Of a stretch of 64,000 nucleotides of DNA, positions 25,801-47,999 are shown one piece after another. A model generated the notes under the pieces. That model was not told where the DNA came from and made no database searches. It saw nothing but the letters and a program-made list of their open reading frames with translations. The position numbers and the translations under genes were made by a program. Positions within the stretch are counted from its first letter, which is position 1. Every line of letters begins with the position of its first letter. Where the stretch lies: contig CATNEN010000039.1 of the NCBI GenBank assembly GCA_950097015.1, positions 17,732,001 to 17,796,000 on the forward strand. The letters run 5' to 3'. Source of the stretch: Macrostomum hystrix (taxonomy: Eukaryota; Animalia; Platyhelminthes).

Positions 25801-28800
25801 ACGGTACTGTAGGAATAAGACAAAAATTTTTTATACGGTACCATGGGGATAAGCACTGCTTTGTCTGATATCAGTTATCACCATTACAAAGGAATTTTTT
25901 GGAATTACTAAACTTGTATTGCAATGTACAAGTCATCACAATTGTCACATGCAACCGTCATTAAAGACGATTCCGTAACGACCATGCCACTTATAAGAAA
26001 CGTTCGCGGTGCTTAATTGCTTATTGCACCGAGGAGGAGCGGTTCAGAATGTCCTGTTTTACAACGCCGAGACCTGGACGTTGCATTGGAATGTATGCAG
26101 TTCATGTACATGTAATATATATGTAATGTATGTGACTGCGACTGGGTACGCATAAAACCTGGCCATCACTGAGCATCGGCTCAGAATAACAAAATCTATA
26201 TATTATTGTGGAACGAGCATTACATAGTATTTTTTCAAGAGCTCAGAAGTTGTGTCGTATGTTTAAGATCGAATAACAAGCAATAAACATTTAATAAAAT
26301 ATTATTTCCTAGCACTTAAAAAATCTTAATTGCTATAAATTACTTTTCATTAATAAAAGAAATAATGATTTGTTATTCTGAACCGATTCCAGGCTAGTGA
26401 TGCCCTACTGCAACTCTGATCTCAAAGAACTACATTGTACACTTCACTTTGCATGCAATTGTGAATTGAACAAATATATCATTTGAGATATGTGCATGTA
26501 TGTACAAAGTGCTTCGAATCACATTTATATATGCGCACTCATTTCAGTGATACGAGCTAATAAGTAAGTCAAGCATGCAGTGCAGATGGTCACATGTGTG
26601 CATGTTGACCGTGCACACAAGTATGGCTTTGAGTGAACGGCTGCCGTGCACGCAAGTATGGCTTTGAGCGAACGGCTGCCGTGCACGCAAGTATGGCTTT
26701 GGGCGAACGGCAGCCGTGCACGCAAGCTCTTCGATTTTTTTTACAACCCTCATATGATGATTTAAAATATGACAATTTCAGCCGGAGCCCAAGAGATTCC
26801 TCAACATGCTTAATATTTAAATTAATCAATATGAATTACTATTCTTCTATAGGGTAAAACATCATCAACCGAACAGTGCATCATCAAACCCGAACATGGA
26901 TGTAGCTTTACTATTTGTTGTCTTGCCATGAAATAATATGATGCTTTTTTTCCCAAGACCCCTCAAATAAAAGAAGAGTTTAATACCTACACGATGATAT
27001 CTCTCCTATCTCAGAACTCTGAGTAAGAAAAATGATATCGCTATTTATCAGCAAGAAAATTTCCAAAAATGTAATTTCTACGAAATGTTGATGTTTTCCA
27101 TGCTTGTAGGAAAAGTTCAATAACTTTCTTAATTGTTAATAGATTTACAAAACTTGCACCTCGATGAACTCTACACAAAATTATCTTTCATTTCACCATA
27201 GAAACTTGCAACAAAATAGTTCCACTAGTATGACAAATACTCTGTTCGGTTGATGATTCATTTTTTTCATTTGGTTCGGTTTTCAAATGTATGCATCATC
27301 AAACCGAACAAAAAAATCATCAAACCGAACAGGAACAAAAAAGCTAAATGATGTGTCTTTGGGCTTGCTTAAGATTCCCTCCGAAAAATAATGCCTTTGC
27401 ACAACATTTATGTCTACAGGAAAGAAACAATGTGCAAAAAACATGCAGAGTTTTGTTTTAAATTTTGACTTGAAAATGTTTGACATTTTATCAACCGGTT
27501 TTTTACATTCGAAGATGTCAAATGTGCTACTTTCTACTGGCAGTAGCAAGAAAGATCATCGCAAATGTTTCAACTTTACTTTGTGCTAGTGCCAAGAATA
27601 ATACTGGGGCAGTAGCCTCTTGCCTCATGCTACCAGTGGAGGGTGGGAGGGTAAGCTGGAAGTGGTGGGAGGGTGAGGGAAGGGGTGGGAGGGTGAGGGA
27701 AGGGGTGGGGGGTGAGGGAAGGAAGGTTATCGAAAAAAAGTTCAAATGAAAGAATATTTCAGGATCACTTTTGTCAATTAGACATAAAAACGTTGTGTTG
27801 TTTCAAGATAAAGCTGGCATGTGTTGTAAGTAGGCCTGTTACCAAGCATTTATATATATATTGTTTTGTTTGCACCTGTAGGCCTAGTATGAGAATAAAC
27901 TTATTGTTAGTAAGCATAGCAGCATGAAAACTAAGGCAAAGCTGATACAATACAATTTAGCATATGCAATTTTTAGCATATTCTAAAAAATGCTCGTTAA
28001 AAACTGCAATAAATAATGGGGATGGTGCAAAAAATAAATTTGAATTGAATAGGTGCAGAGAAACTCAGTTTAAAAAATGTACCTAATTAAGAAATGATTA
28101 GAATTCACTAATATACGCTCGTACATATCAAATTAAGTAATTGCAGCATGCTCATCGCAGATAGAAATTAAAATTTACGTAAATATACATACTATATTGA
28201 CAAAGAGCATGTAGCCTTTAAACAATGACTGAAAGGACGTGGTGGGCCTAGTCTATGCAAAAGAGAAGAAAGAATTTTTAAAGATGTGGTGTATTTATCA
28301 CTTTGCGAAACAGAAGACGTAGACATGTTAGGGGGTGGGAGAGTGAAGGAATATGAGAGGGAATCGGAGAGGTGCCATGGAGAGGCAAAGGGGAGATGTT
28401 GGAGAGGGGAGAGTGTATTGGGAATGGAATGAAGAGGAAAGGGAGATGTAGAGGAGGGTGGGAAATTGGAAATGTGGTGGAGGGATAGGAGATGGGTGGG
28501 ATGGGGGAGAGCAGAATGACGGCTTAATGAGTTCTTGCACTGCAAGAGAGATAAATGGAATTGATATGAACTAATGATGTACGAATCTTCAGGACATAGG
28601 CCCATTGTTTCGTTTCCTGTCAGTCATTGCCTAACTATTGGTAATGGCTTTTCTGCCGCATTCAAGAATTAAAACATGGCTTCAGGATCTTCAATCATTG
28701 TTCAATGTACATAGATTTTGCTCTGAGCAGCCATCAACTCGGTGTGCGTCCAGATCCACCCGTGGGCCCTTCCAATGGATTGAGCTGGAGGCGGCAATGG

Positions 28801-31800
28801 GGCAAGCTCGCTCACCTTCGCCGGAAAGATATCGTCTTCTGCTGGGAAGATAAACGGCCGGCGTCCACGCGCGATCCACTCGGTGATTGATAAGTCACAC
28901 GCGGAAACGACGGCTAGCTGATCATCAAGCTGTTGAATCCGACAAGGGTAAAACTTCCAGTGCGACTTTCCCCGCAGCTTGGCCTCCACAGCAACAAGAG
29001 CCCAGCCGCCTTCACACAGAGACGCTGCAGGAGTCGCCGGCGAGGATGCCGGCTGAGCGCACTTGGGTAGCAGTGGCAGGTAATGCAGTTCGGGGATGTG
29101 CGCTACCCTGAATGGCGGTCCACTGTGCTTGGCGCGGAGTGGCACAATTTTGATCGGTGTGGATAGTCCAGGCTGGTACACATGAACGGCTCGATTTAAT
29201 GCATTTGCTAATCCTGTGATGGCAACATGGTCGGCATATGTTCCCGAGCGACGCATTCCATGAATGTAAGTCTTAAAATCAGACTCCAGAAAGTCGGTTA
29301 CAGGAGTGCCGTTGATGATCGGATTTGATACTAATTGGTCGCAGGACTGCTGGCGGAGCTGCATAGCACCTACATCAGAGCCCTCGGCGTGCAGCAGCTG
29401 TTGAATGGATTCAAAAAAGCAGTCTCCAAATTGTTTTGTCTGGCCTAGGACGCAGTCTAATGAATTGGCCCTAGCCAGAAGCATAGAAAGACACTCGCTT
29501 CGGTCGACTCGCTTCGCTGACCCGCCTGACTTCATCTGCTCAGCAACTTTCCTTTGCTTGGTCGCCCAATCTTTATCTTTCTTTCGTGCGTTGAGCTGTC
29601 GTGTAGCTGAACGAATTTTTTTCGCATCTTGCAACGCTCTCCGCTTGTTGGCCTTTATTCGCAGAAAAGACAAGGTTGATCGACTTGTCAGATTTGAATT
29701 CGGAATGTCCTGGTACACCGATTTTCTTCGTTTCGAGCTGAAGGCCTGCTCTGCAGTGGCTTTCCTCTTGCTGCCCAGCTGTAATAGCACTTCAGCCGCG
29801 GCCTCTGCAGCAGCGGACACAGATTCCAGGCGACAGAAGGAACCTGTTGATTGTGTAGGTACATGTAAGGTATTAAAGCATTTGTAGAACTTCGAATTTC
29901 GAACTTCGAAAGCATTAATTATTATTCAGGGCATCGCCAAGTTTTTTAGCTCGGGCAAGCGGACCGCCACTCCCTCAACTAGCGCCCTGAAGGACAGGGG
30001 CACAGCCACTGCAAAGGACCGGGGACAGCTAGCGACATTCAAAGACCAAGAAGGAAGCAGCCGCACCTTGCAATGCTCGTATCTCAAAATTGTTTTTGCT
30101 ATCAGCTATAGGCCTATAAGATTGCTATTAATTATTATCTGCTTACCTCGATCAATGAACTAAGCTACTACAAGGATAGTCATATTCAATTTAAACAGCA
30201 ATTGACTGGGGAAATTCAGTGTCAAGGAACGAAAAAAGTCGAGTTCCTGTTTTTGCTCTTTTGTCAGCTGAATCTTTTTACTATTTTATAGTTAAATCTT
30301 TATATGTATTATCAACGGGATTGATGGGGCATTGGCCTAATGGGATTAAGGTCTTTAGGTGAGAACTGGTGATATAAATGAATTGGCGGATGCGTTAAGG
30401 TTTTTAGGTTGCGCGCAACTGGGATTTTCAACCTATTCCTGTTAAAGGACACGCGGACTGGATTTACAGACACAGACACAGGGCTGGATTTAGCCACTCA
30501 GGTAGGGGCCTAACATTCAACATTCAACAATATATATTTCATATTTTGTTTTTCCTGGCGTCCCTTGTGTTTTTACTGCTCTTTTTTTAATACCTTTTCT
30601 TTTCCCTTCCCAGCTCGATAGTTAAATCCTACAAAACTTCGTTTTTTACGTCATGTTTTTTGTTGTCCATTAAAATATTTGTTGTCAAAAATATATATAA
30701 AGGAAGCAAAAATCAGCACCCATAGATGGCGTGCGCGTTTCAATAATAATAATAATAATAATAATGCAGCCATAAAAGAGCACCCTGTATTAACCCGTCA
30801 CAAAATACCCGTTAGTTATCAATTCAGTTAGGAATTTAAAATAGATCAAGCGATCGATAATGACTGAGACTGATTCTTTTCCATGCATTGTACATTCTGT
30901 GAACATCTACATATAGTACGAGTAGTTTGCTTTTCGTACTTAATGCTTTACTAAAGGCAAATATGTATGAGTAGAAGGCTTACCTGCAGGTCCCTCAAAA
31001 TCAGATTCCGACTCGCACATCTCGAATGTCGATTCAGTGGATTCGTCTGATGACGACTGCATGTGAGGTGGACAATTGGTTGGCGAATGCCATTGCGAGC
31101 TGCTGGCTGCCGGAGGAGGCGGGCTGTTGGCGGCTGCTGGCGGCGGATGCGGGCTGCTCGCTGTCGACGGAGACGGGCTGCTGGCTGCCGGCGGATGCGG
31201 GCTGCTGACTGTCGGTGGATGCGGGCTGCTGACTGTCGGCGGATGCGGGCTGCTGGCTGTCGGCGGTGGCAGGCTGCTGGCTGTCGGTGGAGGCGGGCTG
31301 CTGGCTGTCGGCGGTGGCAGGCTGCTGGCTGCCTGCGGATGCGGGCTGCTGGCTGTCGGCGGAGGCGGGCTGCTGGCTGCCGGCGGATGCGGGCTGCTGG
31401 CTGTCGGTGGAGGCGGGCTGCTGGCTGTCGGTGGAGGCGGGCTGCTGGCTGTCGGCGGTGGCAGGCTGCTGGCTGCCTGCGGATGCGGGCTGCTGGCTGC
31501 CGGCGGATGCGGGCTGCTGGCTGTCGGCGGAGGCGGGCTGCTGGCTGCCGGCGGATGCGGGCTGCTAGCTGTCGGCGTAGGCGGGCTGCTGGCTGTCGGC
31601 GGAGGCGGGCTGCTGGCTGCCGGCGGATGCGAGCTGCTGGCGGGCATTGTCTTGTGCGAACTGTCAAGAAGGTAGCTCTCCGCAGAGTCGTCAGAACTTG
31701 CAACGTGCTCGTCGCAGGGTCTGTCGCATCTGATGTTTCCTGTCAGAAGAAACAGAAGCTGCCGAAGCTTTCTGTCTTCTTCCTGCAGGCTATCGGACTC

Positions 31801-34800
31801 CGTTTGCAGCCGGTAGAGCTTTTCTGCTCCAAAAACCAGCTCGAAACACAGCTCCACAGATCCTCCGACAGTCTGGCAGGTCTTCGTTGCCTTTGGGGCC
31901 GATGCCGGCATCTGTGATCCAAGATGTCCATTTTCCAAAGTGCCGCTCTCGCTTTCAGCAGCGCTGGCCTTACAGAGCTTATCGAAAGCAGGTGCACATG
32001 GGTTTCGGGGATAAATCCCACTCTTTCGGAAACCGGCTGCAATGTTGGATGCACTGGCCTTGCGTGTAATGACGTCTCGGAATAGCTGCACGAACTGCTG
32101 TCTGCTGATGCAGCCGCCGATTTCAGCCTGCCGTGACCTTTCAGCGAGTAATTCACGCCAGCCGCATTTCACCGGGCGAAAAACGGCCAAATCCAGGGGT
32201 TGCATTACGTGAGTAGCATTTGGCACAAGGCCGTAAAGCACCACCCTCTCCTCACGCAAAAAATCGAGCAGATCAACGGCAAGGCGAGAATCATGAAGAT
32301 CCGTAAAAAGAACTACTGGACGGCGCACATTTTCTCGTACGAGAAACGGCACAAATGTCTCGCGAATGAAAGCATCGAATCCGGCCGCTGTCATCCATCC
32401 GTTAGGCGAAAATGCGTAGTGGCAATCGGAAGGTAGATGGTCAGTTTTCTGCTGAACTTTTCCCGGAAAGACAAAGCGAGGTGGCAGGAGCTGTCCAGAG
32501 CATTGAACGGCCACTAGCACCGTCGTGAACTTCTTGTCGCTGCCGTGCACCTTTTGAACGACGTTCAGCATCCCTTTGGGAGCTAACACGGCCTGCGACT
32601 TCATTCCTTGCGGAACGGCGATCTCATCGCAATTGAAAATTCTCGTTGGATCTTGCAAGGCTCCATCCAGAAGTTCAGAAGTCTCGAAAGCTGCGAGGTC
32701 TGCAAACCAGCTCTTGATTCGAGCTTCAGTGACAATTGTTCGGGCAGGGTTTGCAGCCTGTGGTACCCTCACTGCTATCTCGGGATGCCGCCGCAGGAAT
32801 CCGTCCAACCAGCCGCGAGTAGGAGTGCTCTCGCTCTGTGAAAAAACGAGGAATGCAAAAAAGTATTTACAACTTTGAAGAGACATCTAATGCCTGAATA
32901 TAAGAGGAAGTAAGAGGGGAAGCCTGAAGTAGACCTGGGAAGAGAGGAGAATCCTGAAGTAGACCTGGGAAGAGAGGAGAAGCCTGAGGTTGACCTGAGG
33001 AGAGAGGAGAATCCTGAGGTTGACCTGGGAAGAGAGGAAAAGCCTGAAGTGGACCTGGGAAGAGAGGAGAATCCTGAAGTAGACCTGGGAAGAGAGGAGA
33101 AGCCTGAGGTTGACCTGAGGAGAGAGGAGAATCCTGAGGTTGACCTGGGAAGAGAGGAGAAGCCTGAAGTGGACCTGGGAAGAGAGGAGAATCCTGAAGT
33201 AGACCTGGGAAGAGAGGAGAAGCCTGAGGTTGACCTGAGGAGAGAGGAGAATCCTGAGGTTGACCTGGGAAGAGAGGAGAAGCCTGAAGTGGACCTGGGA
33301 AGAGAGGAGAAGCCTGAAGTGGACCTGGGAAGAGAGGAAAAGCCTGAAGTGGATCTGGGAAGAGAGGAGAAGCCTGAGGTTGACCTGGGAAGAGAGGAGA
33401 AGCCTGAGGTTGACCTGGGAAGAGAGGAAAAGCCTGAAGTGGACCTGGGAAGAGAGAAGAAGCCTGAGGTTGACCTGGGAAGAGAGGAGAAGCCTGAGGT
33501 TGACCTGGGAAGAGAGGAAAAGACTGAAGTGGACCTGGGAAGAGAGAAGAAGCCTGAGGTTGACCTGGGAAGAGAGGAGAAGCCTGAGGTTGACCTGGGA
33601 AGAGAGGAAAAGCCTGAAGTGGATCTGGGAAGAGAGGAGAAGCCTGAGGTGGACCTGAGAAGAGAGGAGAAGCCTGAGGTTGACCTGGGAAGAGAGGAGA
33701 AGCCTGAGGTTGACCTGAGGAGAGAGGAGAATCCTGAGGTTGACCTGGGAAGAGAGGAGAAGCCTGAAGTGGACCTGGGAAGAGAGGAGAAGCCTGAAGT
33801 GGATCTGGGAAGAGAGGAGAAGCCTGAGGTTGACCTGGGAAGAGAGAAAAAGCCTGAAGTGGACCTGGGAAGAGAGGAGAAGCCTGAGGTTGACCTGGGA
33901 AGAGAGGAAAAGCCTGAAGTGGACCTGGGAAGAGAGAAGAAGCCTGAGGTTGACCTGGGAAGAGAGGAGAAGGCTGAGGTTGACCTGGGAAGAGAGGAAA
34001 AGCCTGAAGTGGATCTGGGAAGAGAGGAGAAGCCTGAGGTGGACCTGAGAAGAGAGGAGAAGCCTGAGGTTGACCTGGGAAGAGAGGAGAAGCCTGAGGT
34101 TGACCTGGGAAGAGAGGAGAAGCCTGAGGTTGACCTGGGAAGAGAGGAGAAGCCTGAGGTTGACCTGAGGAGAGAGGAGAATCCTGAGGTTGACCTGGGA
34201 AGAGAGGAGAAGCCTGAAGTGGACCTGGGAAGAGAGGAGAAGCCTGAAGTGGATCTGGGAAGAGAGGAGAAGCCTGAGGTTGACCTGGGAAGAGAGAAAA
34301 AGCCTGAAGTGGACCTGGGAAGAGAGGAGAAGCCTGAGGTTGACCTGGGAAGAGAGGAAAAGCCTGAAGTGGACCTGGGAAGAGAGAAGAAGCCTGAGGT
34401 TGACCTGGGAAGAGAGGAGAAGCCTGAGGTTGACCTGGGAAGAGAGGAAAAGCCTGAAGTGGATCTGGGAAGAGAGGAGAAGCCTGAGGTGGACCTGAGA
34501 AGAGAGGAGAAGCCTGAGGTTGACCTGGGAAGAGAGGAGAATCCTGAGGTTGACCTGGGAAGAGAGGAGAAGCCTGAGGTGGACCTGAGAAGAGAGGAGA
34601 AGCCTGAGGTTGACCTGGGAAGAGAGGAGAAGCCTGAGGTTGACCTGGGAAGAGAGGAGAAGCCTGAGGTTGACCTGGGAAGAGAGGAGAAGCCTGAAGT
34701 GGACCTGGGAAGAGAGGAAAAGCCTGAAGTGGATCTGGGAAGAGAGGAGAAGCCTGAAGTGGATCTGGGAAGAGAGGAGAAGCCTGAAGTGGATCTGGGA

Positions 34801-37800
34801 AGAGAGGAGAAGCCTGAAGTGGATCTGGGAAGAGAGGAGAAGCCTGAAGTGGACCTGGGAAGAGAGGAGAAGCCTGAAGTGGACCTGGGAAGAGAGGAAA
34901 AGCCTGAAGTGGATCTGGGAAGAGAGGAGAAGCCTGAGGTGGACCTGAGAAGAGAGGAGAAGCCTGAGGTTGACCTGGGAAGAGAGAAGAAGCCTGAGGT
35001 TGACCTGGGAAGAGAGGAGAAGCCTGAGGTTGACCTGGGAAGAGAGGAAAAGCCTGAAGTGGACCTGGGAAGAGAGAAGAAGCCTGAGGTTGACCTGGGA
35101 AGAGAGGAGAAGCCTGAGGTTGACCTGGGAAGAGAGGAGAAGCCTGAGGAAGTATAGTGCATGCTGTTGCGCTTGCAGTTCAACCAATTTTTTTAATTAA
35201 GTAGCCAAGGCCCACTTGTGCATGTATAGGCCTACTGGTTCTTTGCCTAGGCCTAGGCCTACTGTAATGGCTACTACGCAATAGTCTATTTTATGAAGCT
35301 TACCTCGATCTGACGTAAGCCACTTCGATCTTCGCTGCTGGACATTTTGGCGATCGCATTTGTTGCCATTTGCAGAAGCTGCTTTCTGCCAATCGGAAGC
35401 TGCTGCAGAGCTGCTTGTTTTATTGTTCTGCTAAACAATTGCTCCTCTGCTTCTGTAAAGTAGCGCTTGCTGGTGTTTTTTGGGGCGGGCTTCTCGCCAT
35501 TTAAATGCTTGCTAACTCTGTCGTACAGTGTTGTGGATGGCACCGAAAAACTGTTGGCAACATTTCGATAGTCGCCATCGAGTCCTTGATTTAGTCGGGT
35601 CAATACGCTTTCAAAGGCTTCCTTGAGCCGTTTCTCTCTCGGCTCTTTTTTTCGCAGTCTCACTGGACCAAACATGATGGCTGGCCCAAAGTCGGCAACT
35701 CGGAGCACAAAAATAGAATTTTAATAACTTGATTGAATTAGGCCTAGTAGAAGCAGGTAGGATTTAGAGTTTAGTAGGACTGGGGCCTCATTTCATATAT
35801 TTTTATAATCCCCAGTCTAGGTGGGAAGTCAATGCAACTTCCTTATTGGTCCCGCTCGCTCAGGCTTGTTGAGCCCAGCCAATAGGATTTAGGCCTAGCC
35901 GCTGAAGCAAAAGTTTCCTACTGAGGCCTCCAGCCTCCTGGTAAACTTACAGCAAACTTCAAGTCAGAAATAAATCTTTTCTTAGGCCTATTTTACACAA
36001 ATTAGCTCACTTTTGTGTCCTTTATATGATTGCACGATCGATATATTTAAAGGCCCATGGTGACGTAGTTCTCCACTGAAGGACCGGAGGACAGGGGTAG
36101 CGGACTGAAGGACCGGTGGAAGAGTAGCAGCTAGCTCCCATGCACCTTGTTGCCATTATGGGTTGCGACTCCTATTGAAGGGCCGGATTTTGATGCGTAC
36201 TTTTACACGTCTCAGAATAAGCGCGCTGGGGAGAAGCGCGTTATAGAAAAAGTGTTAGAATAAGCGCGCAACAGTTTTTAGGCTCAACTGGATTTGGACC
36301 GGAAAATAGGCCTAACTTTAAAAAGTGATTGAAATGCTTAAACTAAGGCGATTCTATTTTCTCCTTTTATGCTACCATATTTAGGAATCAAGCTGCTTGC
36401 AATACTTCGCCTGCTGAAGGCGCGGCGCGGCAGCAGTTCTACTGGTGTGACGCTGCTGGGGCGTATAAGATAGGGGAATATGGGGATATACCTCCCACTT
36501 CAGCCATACACAATGGTGCCTTACTCCCTCAAAGTCTCCAAAACCCACCTGTTTCACACGGCGCTCAAATTTTTCATGAGCGCCCACCTGTTTCAGTATC
36601 TGGCGCCCACCGCACAAGTGTTTTTCTCGTGCCCCATCATAAATTATCCCCCCACTCCGAATCTCCATGGCTACACCCCTGTGACGCTGACTCTCAAGAT
36701 AGGTTTGCGTCATTACATGCAGTTCCAAAATCTTTCTAACTGAGAGAGCAGACTGAGAGCTTCACAGAAAAGTCGCCTGTGGGGGAAGGCTGGATTTTTT
36801 GTGGGGCGTTATTAGGTCGTTACTAGGCCTATAGGCCTAACCACCTCAGAATCGACCCGTTCAATTTATACATGTTGCTCAACTCAGCTCAAAAATCATG
36901 CGAAAGTTGCTAAAATCCCAATCTCAATGAACACCTGGCCCTGTTGCTCCTGAGCTTCAGAATGGATTCTCGTTTCGTTTTTCTCACAAAGGTGCTATAG
37001 GGGCCTAAAAGCCTTCTATTCATCACTGACACTTGAAAGTCAAAAATGTGGTCATCCTTTTTGCTCTTACTTAAGTTGCTAAATCCTTAAATCACACTGG
37101 GTGGCCTAGTTCAATCAATGCGACGCGCTAAAATGGCAACGCAATCGCAACGTTGGGCTTGATATCAAAAGCCTGTCTTTGCCCTGATCTTTTGTGGCCT
37201 ACCTTATTACGTAAGAAAAGGCAAAACCAAAGCCATACCTTATCATATTGTTCAAAAGCACAGATGCATTCTTCATTTCGTTTCTTAGGCCTAGGCCTAT
37301 GTGTGTTCTCCCCCATGCTGTGCGATTCAAATTGCATTTCGAGAAATCTCCCCGCGGGCTCATGATGATGACTAAAAAAATGGGATCCAAGTTGAACTGC
37401 AGCTCAAAATGTGTGAATTACGGACCTTTAGGCATAGATAGGGCCTAGGCTTTAAGTTTCCAAATGAGTTCGCAGCGAATTTTTTGCTGGCTTAATGTCA
37501 CTTGTACTAGTGCCATATGTAGGCTAGGCGGTGACTGTGTGACGATTAGGCTTAAGTCCATAGCCAATCTGAAGCCAAGATTTCTGAAGCCAGCCAAGAC
37601 TCTCATCTGCATCCTGCACTCCAGTTTCTCTGATTTTCATCCACAGTGGCGGATCAAGGAGCAGGAGGGCATATAGCGGATCCAGTTGGCTGGGGGCGGC
37701 AGAGGGTTAGCGGGTCCAGGGAGCGGGGGCAGCAGAGGGTTAGCGGATCCAGGGAGCGGGGGGCGGCAGAGGGTTAGCGGGTCCAGGGAGCGGGGGGCGG

Positions 37801-40800
37801 CAGAGGGTTAGCGGGTCCATAGAGCGGGGGCAGCAGAGGTTAGCGGATCCAGGGAGCGGGGGGCGGCAGAGGGTTAGCGGGTCCAGGGAGCGGGGGGCGG
37901 CAGAGGGTTAGCGGGTCCATAGAGCGGGGGCAGCAGAGGTTAGCGGATCCAGGGAGCGGGGGGCAGCAGAGGTTAGCGGATCCAGGGAGCGGGGGGCGGC
38001 AGAGGGTTAGCGGGTCCATAGAGCGGGGGCAGCAGAGGTTAGCGGATCCAGGGAGCGGGGGGCAGCAGAGGGTAGCGGATCCAGGGAGCGGGGGCAGCAG
38101 AGGGTTAGCGGGTCCAGGGAGCGGGGGGCGGCAGAGGGTTAGCGGGTCCATAGAGCGGGGGCAGCAGAGGTTAGCGGATCCAGGGAGCGGGGGGCGGCAG
38201 AGGTTAGCGGGTCCAGGGAGCGGGGGCAGCAGAGGTTAGCGGATCCAGGGAGCGGGGGGTAGCAGAGGGTAGCGGATCCAGGGAGCGGGGGCAGCAGAGG
38301 GTTAGCGGGTCCAGGGAGCGGGGGGCGGCAGAGGGTTAGCGGGTCCATAGAGCGGGGGCAGCAGAGGTTAGCGGATCCAGGGAGCGGGGGGCAGCAGAGG
38401 GTAGCGGATCCAGGGAGCGGGGGCAGCAGAGGTTAGCGGATCCAGGGAGCGGGGGGTAGCAGAGGGTAGCGGATCCAGGGAGCGGGGGCAGCAGAGGGTT
38501 AGCGGGTCCAGGGAGCGGGGGGCGGCAGAGGGTTAGCGGGTCCATAGAGCGGGGGCAGCAGAGGTTAGCGGATCCAGGGAGCGGGGGGCAGCAGAGGGTA
38601 GCGGATCCAGGGAGCGGGGGCAGCAGAGGGTTAGCGGGTCCAGGGAGCGGGGGGCGGCAGAGGGTTAGCGGGTCCATAGAGCGGGGGCAGCAGAGGTTAG
38701 CGGATCCAGGGAGCGGGGGGCAGCAGAGGGTAGCGGATCCAGGGAGCGGGGGCAGCAGAGGGTTAGCGGGTCCAGGGAGCGGGGGGCGGCAGAGGGTTAG
38801 CGGGTCCATAGAGCGGGGGCAGCAGAGGTTAGCGGATCCAGGGAGCGGGGGGCAGCAGAGGGTAGCGGATCCAGGGAGCGGGGGCAGCAGAGGGTTAGCG
38901 GGTCCAGGGAGCGGGGGGCGGCAGAGGGTTAGCGGGTCCATAGAGCGGGGGCAGCAGAGGTTAGCGGATCCAGGGAGCGGGGGGCAGCAGAGGGTAGCGG
39001 ATCCAGGGAGCGGGGGCAGCAGAGGGTTAGCGGGTTAGCACTTTTTCCAATAAACCATCCGTTGACCTAAATTCAGTTCAACCATGGACTTCGGTCTGCA
39101 AGAAATACTCTGCATCAGTTATTCGGATTGATCAGCGAAGTGAAAAACAAGGCACAATTTCTTGATGCTTTTAATTGGTTGACTGTCATTTTCATGAAGA
39201 GGAAACACAAACGAGATTGGCTGGCTTCCCCTCAAACCCACACAGAACAAGACGGAGCCGCGCTTCCATTGGGTGGCAAGCATTTCTGGGTGGAAATTAA
39301 TTGTTAATTCAGGGCCCCAAGGCACAAAAGACTCCTGTAAATAAAAAAATCTCTAACCTAAAAACACAAATAGAATCTGAAGGAATAAAACACTTCAGTC
39401 TTAATGTGATCTGGCGATCATGTGACACTCCGACAATCACACAGCTGCTGCTTTGGTAAGTAGGCCTAGCCCATACTGCTTTTCTTAAAATATAAGCCTA
39501 GGGGAAAAATATTTTTAAGACTTGAGCCACATAGCAAATGATGACTTCGCTCTAAATTCCGCACTGTACCAGCCATCCGCTCCCTGCTCCGCGCAGTCAG
39601 AACTCTCTTCACTCCCTCCGCTCTCTCTCCCGCTCCTCCAAGCCATCCGCTCTCTCTCCGAGTCCCTCCAAGCCATCCGCTCTCTCTCCGGCTCCCTCCA
39701 AGCCATCCGCTCTCTCTCCCACTCCTCCAAGCCATCCGCTCTTTCTCCGAGTCCCTCCAAGCCATCCGCTCTCTCTCCCACTCCTCCAAGCCATCCGCTC
39801 TTTCTCCGAGTCCCTCCAAGCCATCCGCTCTCTCTCCCGCTCCTCCAAGCCATCCGCTCTTTCTCCGAGTCCCTCCAAGCCATCCGCTCTCTCTCCCGCT
39901 CCCTCCAAGCCATCCGCTTGCTCTCCGAATCCCTCCAAGCCATCAGCTCTCTCTCCGAGTCCCTCCAAGCCCTCCGCTCTCTCTCCCGCTCCCTCCAAGC
40001 CATCCGCTCTCTCTCCCGCTCCCTCCAAGCCATCCGCTCTCTCTCCTGCTCCCTCCAAGCCATCCGCTCTCTCTCCCGCTCCCTCCAAGCCATCCGCTCT
40101 CTCTCCGAGTCCCTCCAAGCCATCCGCTCTCTCTCCCGCTCCCTCCAAGCCATCCGCTCTCTCTCCGAGTCCCTCCAAGCCATCCGCTCTCTCTCCCGCT
40201 CCCTCCAAGCCATCCGCTCTCTCTCCGAGTCCCTCCAAGCCATCCGCTCTCTCTCCCGCTCCCTCCAAGCCATCCGCTCTCTCTCCGGCTCCCTCCAAGC
40301 CATCCGCTCTCTCTCCCGCTCCTCCAAGCCATCCGCTGTCTCTCCGAGTCCCTCCAAGCCATCCGCTCTCTCTCCCGCTCCCTCCAAGCCATCCGCTCTC
40401 TCTCCGAGTCCCTCCAAGCCATCCGCTCTCTCTCCCGCTCCCTCCAAGCCATCCGCTTGCTCTCCGAGTCCCTCCAAGCCATCCGCTCTCTCTCCGAGTC
40501 CCTCCAAGCCCTCCGCTCTCTCTCCCGCTCCCTCCAAGCCATCCGCTCTCTCTCCCGCTCCCTCCAAGCCATCCGCTTGCTCTCCGAGTCCCTCCAAGCC
40601 ATCCGCTCTCTCTTCCGCTCCTCCAAGCCATCCGCTCTCTCTCCGAGTCCCTCCAAGCCATCCGCTCTCTCTCTGAGTCCCTCCAAGCCATCCGCTCTCT
40701 CTCCGAGTCCCTCCAAGCCATCCGCTCTCTCTCCGAGTCCTTCCAAGCCATCCGCTCTCTCTCCGAGTCCTTCCAAGCCATCCGCTCTCTCTCCGAGTCC

Positions 40801-43227
40801 CTCCAAGCCATCCGCTCTCTCTCCCGCTCCCTCCAAGCCATCCGCTTGCTCTCCGAGTCCCTCCAAGCCATCCGCTCTCTCTCCGAGTCCCTCCAAGCCC
40901 TCCGCTCTCTCTCCCGCTCCCTCCAAGCCATCCGCTCTCTCTCCGAGTCCCTCCAAGCCATCCGCTCTCTCTCCCGCTCCCTCCAAGCCATCCGCTCTCT
41001 CTCCGAGTCCCTCCAAGCCATCCGCTCTCTCTCCGAGTCCCTCCAAGCCATCCGCTCTCTCTCCGAGTCCTTCCAAGCCATCCGCTCTCTCTCCGAGTCC
41101 TTCCAAGCCATCCGCTCTCTCTCCGAGTCCCTCCAAGCCATCCGCTCTCTCTCCCGCTCCCTCCAAGCCATCCGCTTGCTCTCCGAGTCCCTCCAAGCCA
41201 TCCGCTCTCTCTCCGAGTCCCTCCAAGCCCTCCGCTCTCTCTCCCGCTCCCTCCAAGCCATCCGCTCTCTCTCCGAGTCCCTCCAAGCCATCCGCTCTCT
41301 CTCCCGCTCCCTCCAAGCCATCCGCTCTCTCTCCGAGTCCCTCCAAGCCATCCGCTCTCTCACCCGCTTGTTCTAAGCCATCCGCTCTCTCTCCCGCTCC
41401 CTCCAAGTCATCCGCTCTCTCTCCCGCTCCCTCCAAGCCATCCGCTCTCTCACCCGCTTCTTCTAAGCCATCCGCTCTCTCTCACGCTCCCTCCAAGCCA
41501 TCCGCTCTCTCACCCGCTCCCTCCAAGTCATCCGCTCTCTCTCCCGCTCCCTCCAAGCCATCCGCTCTCTCACCCGCTTCTTCTAAGCCATCCGCTCTCT
41601 CTCCCGCTCCCTCTAGGCTAGGCCTACCCACTTTCTATTCTTCCCCCTTCAATCAATCAGCTCATCGTTTCCACTCCCTCCTAGCGATCTGCTTTCGATT
41701 TTATTTATATTCTGTGTTCTATTTCTATTCTGCTTTCTATTCTCACCCCACATACCCACTCCCTCTTCCACTCGTCCAGCTTCCACTCCTTTTTCTCCTT
41801 AGCAACAGCTCACTTTTTCCCATTTCCCTGCCATCTGCTGGTTAACAATAGCTGGCTTATTTCATTTGCATTCTCTAACTTGGTGCTCCTTTCCATATGT
41901 ATAACATCGGGAAGTTTTGTTGGCCTTAGGCTTGCTATATGGACACTAGGCCTATTTTCATATCGCATAAAAGATGAGGCAGTTAGGCCTTTATTAACAT
42001 TTATTCTGACCTTACAAAGTATGTGTGAGTCTATACAAAGAACAGCGATAGGCCTATGCCTAACTGCTGTTGTAGGCCTATCCTGTAGGCTTAGGCCTAT
42101 AGGCTACACAGGTGCACATAGTAGGCCCACTGAGACACTGTCGACTCTACAGGTTTCTCTTTTTTCTAATTGGCTGTTGAATTCATTCCTAAGAAAAACT
42201 TTTCCGAAAACACTTGGTAGCTGACGTGTCTTCAACGGCGTACTGGAAGTAGCATAGTTCGAACATGCATGGAGAAAAAAAAAGCAAAATAGGCAGACGA
42301 TCGCTTCTTATTTCAGCAAAATCTTTTTTCGAAAAATGGGACAGTACTCAATTTGGAAAGGCAAATGAAGCATTTAATCATAAAAGTGAGAAACGAAATT
42401 GACTTCTTTATCTTCAATACAATATTTCCTAACTCATCCATCAATTTGTTATGATGTCTACAGTTCCAATCCCTTGCTTTTGAGTGTCAAAATAAAAAAC
42501 CGAACATCAGATTCCTTGTTCGGCTTGATGATGCATGAAAATAGTTGTTCGGTTTTGGTTGTACAAGGTCTATAACTTTTTTTCTACTGAACCAATTCGG
42601 CTCCAACAACATTGTTTCGAAAGAAAAAAGTGTTTTCTACAACTTTCGGTTGTTTTCACTTTGATATTCAGCGTAGTTAAATTTTAAAAGAAGGTTGAAT
42701 GTGTAAAATCATCGATTTCTTGTTCGGTTGATGATGTTTTACCCTAACAATAAAAGTCATAACAGACTTTGTTTTAATTGTCTTTATGGCAGCCAATTTT
42801 GTACAAATATTTTTAAAGACAAGTTAATAGATAGCAGAGAATATGGCAACAAACAAAAAGACTAGAAGCCTACACAATAACTAGGCCTAGGATTCTTCAT
42901 ATAGCTATAAGCCTATAACTATATCTTTAGGCTAAGACCTAGTCTTGTTAATAGGAATACCATCAATATTTCAAAGTTGACTAGACTAATATAATAAAAA
43001 GCACATATCATATTAAAATTTACAGGCCTAGTGCCTATAGCAAACATGTTTTAACTCAACTTACATTGCAGATGTTTTTTCTTTGGAGCCATTTGTTCTT
43101 CTGTGGTTGCCTTGCATACTACTTTAGCCAGGCCTGCTCCAGAAATAGAATGCTTTGCTGCAGTAACTCTGTCCCTTAAACTCTGGCCACTGCCACTGCC
43201 AGCCAGTTGCTTTACAACATTTGACAT
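16856..43227 (-). CDS. PICALM: Clathrin assembly protein PICALM/AP180 (ANTH); exons 43227-43065, 22327-22017, 21538-21218, 19686-19314, 18967-18845, 18764-18418, 17131-16985, 16888-16856
   Basis: [59 protein letters not shown] motifs, [15 protein letters not shown]-terminal DPFGAL; GT-AG phases consistent; intron 1 = 43064-22328. Confidence 0.92.
17196..18406. repeat. 30-bp minisatellite (AAGAATCATGGAAGCTGGCAGACCAGCTAA)n in a PICALM intron, interrupted by a MITE
   Basis: Tandem units on both sides of 17310-17731. Confidence 0.95.
17310..17731 (-). mobile_element. Second copy of the ~420-bp MITE, 2-bp TSD (AA)
   Basis: Inverted copy of 3773-4189; the array unit CTAAAAG became CTAA[element]AAAAG. 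Confidence 0.85.
20191..20800. repeat. 30-bp minisatellite (GCTGTCACCATCCATTCCTTCTGCGAATCA)n
   Basis: About 20 near-perfect units in a PICALM intron. Confidence 0.95.
21660..21906 (-). mobile_element. tRNA-derived SINE copy in PICALM intron 2
   Basis: Reverse complement matches 13093-13390 from head to ATT tail. Confidence 0.7.
25409..25860. mobile_element. Nested MITE, ~115-bp TIRs, 8-bp TSD TTGTCTGA
   Basis: 25411-25523 inverted at 25747-25859; TTGTCTGA at 25401-25408 and 25861-25868. Confidence 0.8.
26144..26406. mobile_element. Small degenerate MITE inserted in the right TIR of the foldback element, 9-bp TSD ACTGC(G/A)ACT
   Basis: Splits the TIR motif GTGACTGCGACTCTGATCT; internal IR ATCGGCTCAGAATAACAAA / TTTGTTATTCTGAACCGAT. 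Confidence 0.65.
28702..35675 (-). CDS. Spliced pogo-like transposase fused to an OTU cysteine protease; exons 35675-35304, 32835-30984, 29843-28702 (1121 aa predicted)
   Basis: HTH-psq ([16 protein letters not shown]); CENP-B HTH (FTEAEEQ...[11 protein letters not shown]); DDE_1 triad FNCDE / FTDLHDS / QPLD with 35-aa spacing; OTU motifs [28 protein letters not shown]; phase-0 and phase-1 GT-AG introns join in frame. Confidence 0.82.
31098..31642 (-). repeat. Coding 30-bp repeat encoding an ([16 protein letters not shown])n linker
   Basis: In-frame 10-aa repeats inside transposase exon 2. Confidence 0.85.
32919..35148. repeat. 30-bp array (AGAGAGGAGAAGCCTGAGGTTGACCTGGGA)n filling transposase intron 1
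   Basis: About 74 indel-free units; 450-bp higher-order duplication (33740 vs 34190). Confidence 0.95.
35801..35883 (-). promoter_or_regulatory. Candidate transposase promoter (TATAAAA 35807-35801; CCAAT boxes at 35849-35845 and 35879-35883)
   Basis: Motif match about 125 bp upstream of ATG 35675; no expression data. Confidence 0.3.
37675..39038. repeat. G-rich ~31-34-bp minisatellite (GGGTTAGCGGGTCCAGGGAGCGGGGGGCGGCAGA)n inside the transposon
   Basis: Tandem repeat with up to four G-runs per unit. Confidence 0.9.
39612..41613. repeat. C/T-rich ~30-bp minisatellite (CCCTCCAAGCCATCCGCTCTCTCTCCGAGT)n inside the transposon
   Basis: Direct tandem repeat. Confidence 0.95.
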
Positions 43228-46966: not shown

Positions 46967-47999
46967 ATGAAGATTCCAGGTTTTGTTTTGATTTTGCTGC
47001 TCTGCTGCATCGTCAGCTCCAATGGCGCCCTAATTATGAAGGTGAACTTCACTAAGACTCAAACATGCCCAGCCAGCACAACCCTGAGTGGGCTGGCCAA
47101 GCTGGAAGCTGCAGCAGATTCTAGGACCTGCTTTGTTGAGTGCGCCGTCATGAAAAACTGCTCCGTGATGTTCAGGAGCAGCTCCTTGGCTGTGTGACTA
47201 CTTTGGTGACTCACAGCAGTTGGCTACAAAGTTTTCTCTGACAAACTCATCTGGACCTGGACAGCTATGTGAGAGTCACGTGAGAACCTGGGAATGGCCG
47301 GTGAGCCCGTCAACTGCGCCTGCAGTTCCGACGCCTCCACCAGCACCAGGTCTGGCCGCGAGTCTGCTAGCCAAGCTGATCATCTTCTTTGACTTCAGAG
47401 TGAGCTATTTCAACCTTGTCAACCCGGCCAAGTATCTAGCCACTCCTCACGGATCTGTCTCGAGAGATTCTACGGGAGTAATTTTTCCCGGGGGGAGCGA
47501 CCAGAACTACATTGAAGTCGACACGGACGGAAATTCGTTGGCTGCGAATTACCTTGGACAATCAATGAAATTCACTATATACTCGAGAACATATCGGCAA
47601 GGCACTCACCAGACTTATCATTACTTTTATGACTGTTCAATGACTATCAATCGCGGAGAATTATTCGACAATAATGGTAAGATCTATTTTGCGCACAATT
47701 TTACAACATCAGTTTCTTTGAAAAGAACTAGCAGTACAGTGTTCAGTAGCCCCGGCTCAAGTACGCTAGCTTCAGTTGGTGTCATCTTTGATGGTAACAC
47801 GGTTACAAATTTTTACGAGAAAGGCAGCGCTGAGAGTGCGTCAACCGACACCACAACGATTTCTGGTCCACCTCTGTGCCTGCGCCTCGGATACAACAGC
47901 AACCCATCCTACTCATTCAGCGGCCTGTTTATCTGCTATGCCGTTGCTAATGACGCGCTCACTATTAACGAAATTCAGCAAATAGCTACGTATTGTTGA
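46967..47999 (+). pseudogene. Intronless secreted PAN/apple-like + Pro linker + ConA-like (LamG3) protein with one frameshift near 47189
   Basis: Signal peptide MKIPGFVLILLLCC; Cys pattern CFVECAVMKNC...(frameshift)LCDYF; C-terminal LRLGYN..FSGLF...ALTINEIQQI typical of LamG3/ConA folds. Confidence 0.55.

What the first reader, a model, noticed from the sequence alone, without database searches (positions are those of the whole stretch)
28702..35675. Pogo-type DD35D transposase spliced in frame to an OTU deubiquitinase-like domain
Seen: three ORF-track fragments join through canonical splice sites. Exon 35675-35304 ends GAG|GTAAGC (phase 0). Exon 32835-30984 runs from TTTTCACAG| to GCAG|GTAAGC (phase 1). 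Exon 29843-28702 starts at CAACAG|GT and continues in frame into the 372-aa ORF. The predicted 1121-aa product has HTH-psq, CENP-B HTH, an intact D/D35D triad, an S/P linker, a basic NLS-like segment, an OTU domain with candidate catalytic Cys (GDCFF) and His (ELHY), and an SH3/Tudor-like tail, with no stops or frameshifts. Established: OTU or Ulp1 proteases occur in Helitrons, Ginger1, MULEs and Zisupton. I do not know them as a described feature of pogo transposases. Inference: the transposase may carry its own deubiquitinase to escape degradation or to remove ubiquitin marks from chromatin or repair proteins at excision/insertion sites.
Basis: partly seen in the sequence, partly recalled or inferred. 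Interest (0 to 1): 0.92.

Follow-up and report, generated by a model that had tools for sequence, protein, structure and literature searches.

The report
Pogo transposon carrying OTU protease
A 15.9-kb jumping gene of the pogo type makes one spliced, transcribed gene that joins its cut-and-paste enzyme to a ubiquitin-removing (OTU) protease domain, a combination I found in no paper on pogo elements, although other transposon groups are known to carry such proteases.

Summary
The three minus-strand exons (35675-35304, 32835-30984, 29843-28702) are open, and they have the stated GT..AG sites and phases.

- **Domains.** Exon 2 is a DDE_1 transposase with an intact DD35D triad. Exon 3 is an OTU domain by Pfam, by profile against solved structures and by fold (Z 17.5). 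Its Cys and His are invariant.
- **Splice evidence.** Contigs from four public runs (one study, library type not on record) match this copy with 0 mismatches and skip exactly 29844-30983. The transposase-to-OTU splice is therefore used.
- **Conservation.** Both introns keep their position and phase in three diverged paralogues in this genome. Unnamed public proteins P0001, P0026 and P0059 carry DDE_1 and OTU in one uninterrupted ORF.
- **Transposon features.** The gene lies in a 15.9-kb element with perfect 26-nt terminal inverted repeats and TA flanks. The same repeat motif occurs 281 times in the genome, and about 640-bp MITEs share it.
- **Not shown.** Deubiquitinase activity and its role in transposition are inferred. 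The Tudor-like tail is weakly supported (Z 6.5). The exon 1-2 junction has homology support only.
- **Earlier work.** The scan found this fusion before at two other places in this genome (s1-337234, s1-392118).

I rate it a new variant of a known kind.

The parts
26850..42746 (-). Whole element, 15,897 bp. TA flanks at 26850-51 and 42745-46 enclose GGGTAAAAC...GTTTTACCC. About 39% of it (6,225 bp) is tandem repeat. It holds a single gene.
   Evidence: Inverted repeat I1; flanks; tandem repeats; ORF survey.
26850..26875 (.). Left terminal inverted repeat (26 nt, including the TA).
   Evidence: 100% complementary to 42721-42746. The motif has 281 genome hits at up to 3 mismatches, against 0 for the reversed control.
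42721..42746 (.). Right terminal inverted repeat (26 nt, including the TA).
27237..27311 (.). Subterminal copies of the ATCATCAACCGAACA-like motif (27237-27257 and 27291-27311). A partner copy lies at 42516-42536. These are candidate transposase binding sites (inference).
   Evidence: Inverted repeats I4 and I5.
35304..35675 (-). Exon 1, 124 codons from the ATG. It holds an HTH_psq-like region and the first half of the Tc5/CENP-B-type HTH.
   Evidence: Its end abuts the start of exon 2 on homologue P0003. The donor position and phase 0 are conserved in paralogues.
32836..35303 (-). Intron 1 (2,468 nt, GT..AG). It holds a 30-bp x 74.6 minisatellite at 32913-35149.
   Evidence: No RNA evidence was obtained for this junction.
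30984..32835 (-). Exon 2. It holds the end of the Tc5 HTH and the DDE_1 core, with D70 (32626-32628), D179 (32299-32301) and D215 (32191-32193). The linker follows.
   Evidence: Pfam DDE_1 E 1.1e-10; triad and spacing of 35.
31095..31641 (-). Coding minisatellite, 24 bp x 22.5, encoding [16 protein letters not shown] repeats (the S/P linker). It is absent from the paralogues.
29844..30983 (-). Intron 2 (1,140 nt, GT..AG, phase 1). It is removed in the contigs of four runs.
   Evidence: Joint 29841>30982, 'skips 1140, CT..AC (cut +2)', in X1-X4. Intron depth is 0 except at a short repeat at 30519-30583. Position and phase are conserved in L026 and L027.
28702..29843 (-). Exon 3. It holds a basic segment, long helices, the OTU domain and a beta-barrel tail, and ends with stop TGA at 28702-28704.
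29056..29520 (-). OTU domain (about residues 108-262 of exon 3). Cys141 is at 29419-29421 and His253 at 29083-29085.
   Evidence: Pfam OTU E 1.5e-8. Profile against solved structures: OTUD5, E 3.2e-13. Foldseek: OTUD5 and OTUD3, E 4.5e-8 to 1.9e-7. VIA-align: Z 17.5, 17.3 and 17.2 for Otu2, OTUD3 and OTUD1. Invariant residues.
28705..29010 (-). C-terminal tail of about 100 residues, a small beta-barrel with a Tudor/chromo/PWWP-like fold.
   Evidence: Tail model pLDDT 84. Best VIA match is the PHF19 Tudor domain: Z 6.5, rmsd 1.7 A, 54 of 57 residues aligned. Foldseek found nothing below E 0.14. No Pfam hit.

Best explanation
This is an apparently autonomous, transcribed DNA transposon of the pogo superfamily (IS630-Tc1-mariner group).

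Reading from the N-terminus it holds:
- paired helix-turn-helix DNA-binding domains, which probably bind the terminal and subterminal ATCATCAACCGAACA motifs;
- a DD35D RNase-H-like core for cut-and-paste insertion at TA;
- an S/P-rich linker made by a coding minisatellite;
- a basic helical segment;
- an OTU cysteine-protease domain of the OTUD type, with Cys141 and His253;
- a Tudor-like beta-barrel.

Shown: the gene structure, the exon 2-3 splice, the domain identities, the terminal repeats and TA duplication, related MITEs, and long-term purifying selection on both halves.

Inferred: the OTU domain is an active deubiquitinase, or a protease for a ubiquitin-like modifier, that travels with the transposase. 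It would strip ubiquitin from the transposase itself or from chromatin and repair proteins at the donor or target site. The barrel would help dock it on chromatin.
For: - Pfam DDE_1 and OTU hits above threshold, and the DD35D triad.
- Contigs of 1455-1465 nt in four runs match with 0 mismatches and skip exactly the predicted intron with GT..AG ends. Exon depth is 11-17 and intron depth is 0.
- Introns 1 and 2 keep their position and phase in paralogues that are about 62% (transposase) and about 43% (OTU) identical in protein.
- Between subfamilies dN is 0.33-0.63 while dS is saturated, so both exons were kept under selection.
- P0001, P0026 and P0059 carry DDE_1 and OTU in one ORF. P0026 also has HTH_psq and HTH_Tnp_Tc5.
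- There are perfect 26-nt terminal repeats with TA flanks and 281 repeat-motif hits against 0 in the control. MITEs of about 640 bp, and the C1 paralogue element, are also flanked by TA.
- OTU fold at Z 17.5, and invariant G139, C141, F143, D204, H205, H248, E251, H253 and Y254.
- Predicted complex with the genome's own ubiquitin: score 0.83, best of 3 controls 0.00. That mark was reached by 51 of 78 solved complexes and 2 of 108 mismatched pairs. The runs agree in at least 93% of contacts and the partner's pLDDT is at least 92. The ubiquitin tail (residues 70-76) lies against residues 137-142, 202-206 and 248-254.
- Helitron-encoded VTD deubiquitinases are enzymatically active (PMC9741609).
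Against: - No enzymatic or transposition data exist.
- The runs are not on record as RNA (kind '?'), and all four come from one study.
- The exon 1-2 junction has no read support, and the contigs break in the S/P repeat. No single molecule was shown to span the transposase core and the OTU domain.
- The Asp usually found three residues before the OTU Cys is absent in this family (QFGDC, SFGNC), so the third catalytic residue is unclear.
- OTU-ubiquitin complexes are solved, so the complex score may come from the model's memory.
- Only one copy of this subfamily carries the gene, so recent mobility of this copy is not shown.
- The gene lies on the same strand as a host ANTH (PICALM-like) gene, so its promoter is unknown.
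Confidence: 0.85

Rival explanations
1. The OTU domain is mainly a processing protease acting in cis. It would cut the fusion protein, for example in the linker, to release the transposase from the OTU-barrel part, as OTU-like and papain-like proteases of RNA viruses process polyproteins. Any deubiquitinase activity would be secondary or absent.
For: Viral deubiquitinases often also process polyproteins (PMC9741609 introduction). A long, poorly conserved linker separates the transposase from the OTU domain. The nearest folds include viral OTU proteases, at Z 12-14.
Against: No ubiquitin-like LRGG cleavage motif is evident in the linker shown. I looked by eye only and ran no systematic search. 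The best fold and profile matches are cellular OTUD-type deubiquitinases. The predicted ubiquitin docking is canonical.
Confidence: 0.12
2. The OTU domain is a catalytically weak or dead ubiquitin-binding module. It would recruit the transposase to ubiquitinated chromatin or proteins rather than remove ubiquitin.
For: The canonical Asp at position -3 from the Cys is missing. Ubiquitin binding is predicted.
Against: Cys141 and His253 are invariant across relatives as low as 20% identical. This is not expected of a pure binding module.
Confidence: 0.1
3. The locus is a domesticated host gene family derived from a transposase-OTU fusion and is no longer a mobile element.
For: Gene-bearing copies are few, about six loci in three diverged subfamilies. 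The ORFs are conserved. The gene is expressed.
Against: This copy has perfect terminal repeats and TA flanks. The C1 paralogue also lies between matching repeats with TA flanks. Hundreds of repeat-motif hits and MITEs share the ends. Copies L026 and L027 are 92.6% identical, including their non-coding DNA. Some copies are decaying: there is a stop in L028 and a TAA in L029, and L030 is fragmentary.
Confidence: 0.05
4. The transposase and the OTU are two separate neighbouring genes, and the in-frame join is a coincidence.
For: The exon 2 frame runs on for 15 codons to a stop at 30940 if it is left unspliced.
Against: A spliced contig was found in four runs. The phase-1 intron is conserved in paralogues. 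P0001, P0026 and P0059 have continuous ORFs.
Confidence: 0.02

Closest known systems
pogo superfamily transposons (Tigger, Passer, pogoR and others) of the IS630-Tc1-mariner group
   Same: DDE_1 core with a DD35D triad, N-terminal psq and Tc5/CENP-B-type HTH domains, short terminal inverted repeats, TA target duplication, and associated MITEs. The best named relatives are 'tigger transposable element-derived'-like proteins at 33-38% identity.
   Different: It carries a C-terminal OTU protease domain and a Tudor-like barrel. It has two introns. It is 15.9 kb long, with about 39% minisatellite. Neither pogo survey that I read (PMC7386202, PMC7325037) mentions a protease or ubiquitin domain. The family within pogo was not resolved.
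Ginger1 transposons (Bao et al. 2010, PMC2836005)
   Same: A cut-and-paste transposase with a C-terminal OTU (or Ulp1) protease in one protein, often with introns. The same hypothesis has been proposed, that ubiquitin-pathway proteases assist transposition or repair.
   Different: The Ginger1 transposase is a Gypsy-like integrase (rve), not DDE_1. Distant OTU relatives P0036 and P0078 have rve + OTU, and they are a different lineage.
Helitron/Helentron elements with OTU or VTD deubiquitinase domains (PMC9741609; PMC11417382)
   Same: A transposon-encoded deubiquitinase-type domain fused to the transposition protein. The VTD domains were shown to be active deubiquitinases.
   Different: These are rolling-circle RepHel elements with no DDE transposase. 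According to that paper, the activity of transposon OTU domains has never been tested.
Cellular OTUD-type deubiquitinases (OTUD5/DUBA, OTUD3, OTUD1, yeast Otu2)
   Same: Fold match at Z 17.2-17.5 with rmsd 2.0-3.1 A over 135-145 residues. Profile E 3.2e-13 to OTUD5. The Cys and His are in place.
   Different: Sequence identity is 12-21%. There is no Asp at -3 from the Cys. The domain is embedded in a transposase.
Unnamed public proteins P0001 (Logan), P0026 (Logan) and P0059/P0126 (JGI)
   Same: DDE_1 and OTU lie in one continuous ORF. P0001 is 50-53% identical to this gene. P0026 has the full HTH_psq + HTH_Tnp_Tc5 + DDE_1 + OTU set.
   Different: None carries a functional name: P0001 and P0026 are unnamed and the P0059 cluster is labelled only 'hypothetical protein'. 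P0001 is N-terminally truncated and has Asn in place of the second catalytic Asp. They show no clear Tudor-like tail.

Membership tests
pogo superfamily (IS630-Tc1-mariner group) | DDE_1-type catalytic core (Pfam PF03184) | tested here: met
   E 1.1e-10, 41.8 bits against a cut-off of 22.
pogo superfamily (IS630-Tc1-mariner group) | DDD triad, with the third residue Asp and pogo-type spacing (DD35D here) | tested here: met
   D70, D179 and D215 align with the catalytic columns of Tigger-like proteins. The spacing is 35. DD35D is among the spacings listed for pogo families in PMC7386202.
pogo superfamily (IS630-Tc1-mariner group) | N-terminal HTH_psq/CENP-B_N plus HTH_Tnp_Tc5 DNA-binding domains | tested here: inconclusive
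   This copy's exon 1 has no Pfam hit. Paralogue exon 1 sequences that are 57-60% identical pass HTH_psq at 23 bits against a cut-off of 20.4, and they show the first half of Tc5. Exons 1 and 2 align to the HTH region of P0003 and P0026 and abut there. The joined protein was not scanned, by rule.
pogo superfamily (IS630-Tc1-mariner group) | Terminal inverted repeats and TA target-site duplication | tested here: met
   Perfect 26-nt repeats with TA on both flanks. The same holds for the C1 element and for 3 of 4 MITEs.
pogo superfamily (IS630-Tc1-mariner group) | Placement in a named pogo family (Tigger, Passer, pogoR, Lemi, Mover, Fot) | not tested
   No reference set of the named families was at hand. 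The tree used only database hits.
OTU cysteine proteases / deubiquitinases (Pfam PF02338) | Sequence match to the OTU profile | tested here: met
   35.6 bits against a cut-off of 23.3. Profile against solved structures: OTUD5, E 3.2e-13.
OTU cysteine proteases / deubiquitinases (Pfam PF02338) | OTU fold | tested here: met
   Model pLDDT 85.9. Z 17.5, 17.3 and 17.2 to Otu2, OTUD3 and OTUD1. Foldseek E 4.5e-8.
OTU cysteine proteases / deubiquitinases (Pfam PF02338) | Catalytic Cys and His conserved | tested here: met
   C141 and H253 are invariant in alignment A1 and at least 90% conserved in the 78-sequence alignment A2.
OTU cysteine proteases / deubiquitinases (Pfam PF02338) | Third (acidic or Asn) catalytic residue | tested here: inconclusive
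   There is no Asp at -3 from the Cys in this family. E251 and D204 are invariant, but their geometry was not examined.
OTU cysteine proteases / deubiquitinases (Pfam PF02338) | Isopeptidase activity on ubiquitin or a ubiquitin-like modifier | not testable with these tools
   There is only a predicted complex with ubiquitin: 0.83 against a best control of 0.00.
Tudor / 'Royal family' beta-barrels | Fold match and sequence family match | tested here: inconclusive
   Best match is the PHF19 Tudor domain: Z 6.5, rmsd 1.7 A, 54 of 57 residues. The hit list is dominated by Tudor, chromo, PWWP and Agenet domains, but all Z values are under 8. Foldseek gave E of 0.14 or more. No Pfam hit.
Tudor / 'Royal family' beta-barrels | Aromatic cage for methyl-lysine or methyl-arginine | not tested
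   The model coordinates were not inspected.
Ginger1 / Helitron (known OTU-bearing transposons) | rve integrase (Ginger1) or RepHel (Helitron) as the transposition enzyme | tested here: not met
   Only DDE_1 was found in the gene. The element has no other long non-repeat ORF.

The most novel reading that the evidence does not exclude
OTU-bearing pogo elements form an old, distinct lineage within the pogo superfamily. It would comprise this genome's three subfamilies plus P0001, P0026 and P0059. In it a tethered deubiquitinase, here with a chromatin-reader-like barrel, would be required for transposition or for the stability of the transposase. That would be the first accessory enzymatic domain known in an IS630-Tc1-mariner transposase, and a tractable system for asking why unrelated transposons (Ginger1, Helitron, MULE, CACTA) keep acquiring ubiquitin-family proteases.
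Probability: 0.35. Interest if true: 0.75.

Novelty: new variant of a known kind. Interest (0 to 1): 0.62.

Why it matters
Unrelated transposon groups have repeatedly picked up ubiquitin or SUMO proteases, and nobody has shown why. A 2022 study states that transposon OTU domains have never been assayed (PMC9741609).

Tc1/mariner/pogo elements are the simplest and best-understood eukaryotic cut-and-paste transposons, and they work in heterologous cells. An intact, expressed pogo element with a fused OTU domain would give a direct test: a transposition assay with wild type against Cys141Ala. That would show whether the protease serves transposition, protects the transposase from degradation, or acts on chromatin and repair factors.

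The element also illustrates how a normally compact transposon can grow to 16 kb through minisatellites, including one that expanded inside the coding linker.

Tried and rejected
- **The look-up of encoding contigs.** It was closed, so the contigs and organisms of P0001 and P0026 could not be examined.
- **Read laying.** I kept clear of the long repeats, so the junction 35304^32835 and continuity through the S/P repeat were not tested.
- **Pfam on exon 1 of this copy.** No hit, even at E up to 10.
- **Foldseek on the tail model.** Nothing below E 0.14.
- **ESM Atlas with exon 3.** No usable hit.
- **Profile search with A4.** Among 54 Tigger-like hits only P0026 itself had OTU. The crustacean relatives P0131-P0133 and P0136, which group with the OTU-bearing rows, show no OTU by Pfam.
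- **Tree of the transposase cores.** The seven OTU-bearing rows fall in one 11-row group, but with SH-aLRT of only 86, and the OTU label needs two changes. A single origin is neither shown nor excluded.
- **dN/dS within a subfamily (0.47-0.81).** Too few changes to interpret.
- **Host organism.** Not identified.
- **Rejected readings.** Two separate genes, a chance ORF arrangement, and a Ginger1 or Helitron identity.

Full report
**1. The observation**

- The ATG lies at 35675.
- The first donor reads GAG|GTAAGC after 35304.
- The first acceptor reads TTTTCACAG| before 32835.
- The second donor reads GCAG|GTAAGC after 30984.
- The second acceptor reads CAACAG|GT before 29843.

The exon lengths of 372, 1852 and 1142 nt give phases 0 and 1. 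The split codon is G|GT (Gly) and the stop is TGA at 28704-28702. Each exon is an open frame.

I did not build, scan or fold the joined protein.

**2. Domains**

*Transposase.* Exon 2 matches Pfam DDE_1 (E 1.1e-10) and exon 3 matches Pfam OTU (E 1.5e-8). Both are above the curated cut-offs. In an alignment with Tigger-like proteins the catalytic columns hold D70, D179 and D215 of exon 2, with 35 residues between the last two.

*DNA-binding region.* Exon 1 of this copy has no Pfam hit. It is 57-60% identical to the exon 1 sequences of two paralogues. Those pass the HTH_psq threshold and carry the first half of HTH_Tnp_Tc5. On the Tigger-like protein P0003, exon 1 residues 36-122 align to positions 26-104 and exon 2 residues 2-301 align to positions 104-403. 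The two exons therefore abut within the Tc5 HTH, which spans P0003 62-125. This supports the exon 1-2 junction by homology only.

*OTU domain.* An AlphaFold2 model of exon 3 has a mean pLDDT of 85.9. The matches to solved structures are:

| Search | Best matches | Score |
|---|---|---|
| Foldseek | OTUD5, OTUD3 | E 4.5e-8 to 1.9e-7 |
| VIA-align | yeast Otu2, OTUD3, OTUD1 | Z 17.5, 17.3, 17.2 |
| Family profile | OTUD5 | E 3.2e-13 |

G139, C141, F143, D204, H205, H248, E251, H253 and Y254 are invariant across nine sequences whose identity falls as low as 20%. The Asp usually found three residues before the Cys is missing in this family.

*Linker and basic segment.* The linker is a coding minisatellite (24 bp x 22.5 copies, 31095-31641) that encodes SSPPPPTA-like repeats. 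The paralogues lack it. The 'NLS-like' KRK...KRRK stretch is present, but I did not test it.

*Tail.* The last 100 or so residues fold with confidence into a small beta-barrel (pLDDT 84). The best match is the PHF19 Tudor domain (Z 6.5, rmsd 1.7 A, 54 of 57 residues), and Tudor, chromo, PWWP and Agenet domains dominate the hit list. All Z values are under 8, Foldseek found nothing significant and Pfam has no hit. 'Tudor-like' is a reasonable label, not a demonstrated membership.

**3. Is it one gene?**

Three independent lines say yes for the key transposase-OTU junction.

(a) *Transcript-like contigs.* Four public runs hold a contig of 1455-1465 nt that matches this copy with 0 mismatches and 0 gaps. 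The runs come from one study, each has 44-50 Mb of contigs, and the library type is not on record. Each contig covers about 28600-29841, skips exactly 1140 nt, and continues at 30982 and beyond. The skipped piece ends CT..AC on the plus strand (cut +2). On the minus strand that is GT..AG, joining 30984 to 29843. Exon depth is 11-17. Intron depth is 0 except at a short repeat at 30519-30583. The genome holds no intron-less copy, so the simplest reading is spliced mRNA. The contigs stop inside the S/P repeat, so continuity back to the DDE core is not shown.

(b) *Paralogues.* The same order and strand (exon 1-like, then DDE, then OTU) recurs at C11, C2 and C1:19.44 Mb, and in broken form at C1:13.46 and 14.14 Mb. 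Protein identity is about 62% for the transposase and 41-44% for the OTU. In the C11 and C2 copies a phase-1 donor (agccag|GTAAGA) and an acceptor (...CAG|gt) sit at the homologous positions. Intron 1 keeps its position and phase 0 as well. For the C11 and C2 copies I read that donor and acceptor by eye from the printed sequence.

(c) *Foreign proteins.* These have no intron at all between the two domains. P0001 (644 aa, 50-53% identical) runs from the DDE core through the linker into the OTU. P0026 (838 aa) has HTH_psq + HTH_Tnp_Tc5 + DDE_1 + OTU. P0059 and P0126 have DDE_1 + OTU. None carries a functional name: P0001 and P0026 are unnamed and the P0059 cluster is labelled only 'hypothetical protein'.

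Between subfamilies dN is 0.33-0.37 for the transposase and 0.53-0.63 for the OTU exon, while dS is saturated. Both halves were therefore kept under purifying selection as the family diversified.

**4. It is a transposon**

- A perfect 26-nt inverted repeat (26850-26875 and 42721-42746) bounds a 15,897-bp element with TA on both flanks.
- The core repeat motif occurs 281 times in the genome at up to 3 mismatches, against 0 for the reversed control. Many hits form pairs about 620 bp apart.
- Of four such MITEs that I fetched, three have TA on both flanks. The C1 paralogue also sits between matching repeats with TA flanks.
- End fragments of this very subfamily occur on C7 (93% identity over 290 bp) and C38 (96% over 82 bp).
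- Subterminal copies of the ATCATCAACCGAACA motif lie inside both ends.
- About 39% of the element is minisatellite, and it contains no other gene.
- The C11 and C2 copies are 92.6% identical over more than 5.6 kb, including non-coding DNA.
- Some copies are decaying. The C1:19.44 Mb copy has an in-frame stop in the linker, the C1:13.46 Mb copy has a TAA in the OTU, and the C1:14.14 Mb copy has a fragmentary DDE.

The window's copy is intact in all three exons.

**5. Mechanism**

*Shown:* a pogo-type transposase gene fused by splicing to an OTU domain inside a TA-inserting element with terminal inverted repeats.

*Inferred:* the OTU domain is an active isopeptidase. A predicted complex of residues 106-266 with the genome's own ubiquitin scored 0.83, and the best of 3 controls scored 0.00. 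That mark was reached by 51 of 78 solved complexes and 2 of 108 mismatched pairs. The runs agree in at least 93% of contacts and the partner's pLDDT is at least 92. The ubiquitin tail (residues 70-76) and the Ile44 patch lie against residues 137-142, 202-206 and 248-254. Because OTU-ubiquitin complexes have been solved, this shows likeness and not binding.

The published idea for other transposons is that such proteases protect transposition proteins from degradation or act on repair factors (PMC2836005; PMC9741609). Helitron VTD deubiquitinases are active, but according to PMC9741609 no transposon OTU domain has been assayed.

The rivals are a cis-processing protease, a dead ubiquitin-binding module, and a domesticated host gene. 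They are scored in their own section.

**6. Comparison and novelty**

The transposase half meets the tested pogo criteria: DDE_1, DD35D, terminal inverted repeats and TA duplication. Its HTH domains are supported only through paralogues and homologues. It is not a Ginger1 or a Helitron, because it has no rve or RepHel. Proteins with rve + OTU (P0036, P0078) turned up only as distant OTU relatives.

Two pogo surveys contain no mention of OTU, protease or ubiquitin. Full-text searches for pogo or Tigger together with OTU found nothing relevant. I could not search Repbase or Dfam.

In a tree of transposase cores the seven OTU-bearing rows fall in one 11-row group with four crustacean-type proteins that lack OTU. 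Support is SH-aLRT 86. A single origin is possible but not shown.

The scan had already noted the same fusion at two other places in this genome (s1-337234, s1-392118). A sister note reported the element's terminal repeats (s1-845711), which I confirmed.

**7. Verdict**

The finding is real and well supported as a structure. Its function is inferred. It is a new variant of a known kind, namely protease-carrying DNA transposons within the pogo superfamily. I score interest at 0.62.

Noticed in passing
G000 genome-wide, e.g. L040 (C1:4949679-4950328), L041, L042, L043: An abundant MITE family of about 640-650 bp has terminal repeats GGGTAATGTATCATCAACCGAACA, 3 mismatches from this element's repeat. 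TA flanks both sides in 3 of the 4 fetched. Together with other variants the motif occurs 281 times, against 0 in the reversed control.
   Followed up: partly
window 32913-35149, 37674-39035, 39617-41613, 31095-31641: Minisatellites of 30, 33 (or 132), 30 and 24 bp make up about 39% of the element. One lies in intron 1. One is coding and forms the S/P linker, which is found only in this copy. Paralogue elements carry their own minisatellites.
   Followed up: partly
window 21224-21547 and 22020-22316 (minus strand): ANTH-domain exons (profile positions 132-241 and 27-130) of a PICALM/AP180-like host gene lie on the same strand as the transposase gene. The element sits upstream of them, either in an intron or in the 5' flank. 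I did not locate the first exon.
   Followed up: partly
exon 3 residues about 40-70 (window about 29630-29725) and the paralogues: A strongly conserved motif, RRKxSVYQ[DE][18 protein letters not shown], lies upstream of the OTU domain and is shared with P0001. It is better conserved than much of the OTU domain and its function is unknown. It precedes a long predicted helix (residues 54-105).
   Followed up: no
L028 (C1:19.44 Mb), L029 (C1:13.46 Mb), L030 (C1:14.14 Mb): Paralogue copies are in different states of decay. L028 has an in-frame stop between the DDE end and the intron-2 donor, L029 has a TAA inside the OTU exon, and L030 has a fragmentary DDE. L028 and L029 are 96% identical over the OTU part.
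   Followed up: partly
P0001 (Logan protein): The closest foreign relative has Asn in place of the second catalytic Asp (LFTNLHDS) and starts inside the DDE core. It may come from an inactive or truncated copy.
   Followed up: no
window 30519-30583 (inside intron 2): A repeat of about 65 nt matches the ends of other contigs in the same runs. Those contigs are 0.3-6.5 kb long at depths of 14-32, so this is a dispersed repeat expressed elsewhere.
   Followed up: no
window 28053-28602: Low-depth contigs (2-5) lie downstream of the stop codon, while the main spliced contig ends at about 28600-28609. They could be a longer 3' UTR, read-through, or host pre-mRNA.
   Followed up: no
window 50916-51548 (-) and 47220-47999 (+): An ORF with ankyrin repeats (E 1e-14), and an ORF with a weak Laminin_G_3 match (E 3e-4, below the cut-off). 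Both lie outside the element.
   Followed up: no
P0036, P0078 (Logan proteins): Distant OTU relatives carry rve integrase + OTU (Ginger1-like). P0024 combines a protein kinase with OTU, and P0077 combines TPR repeats with OTU.
   Followed up: no
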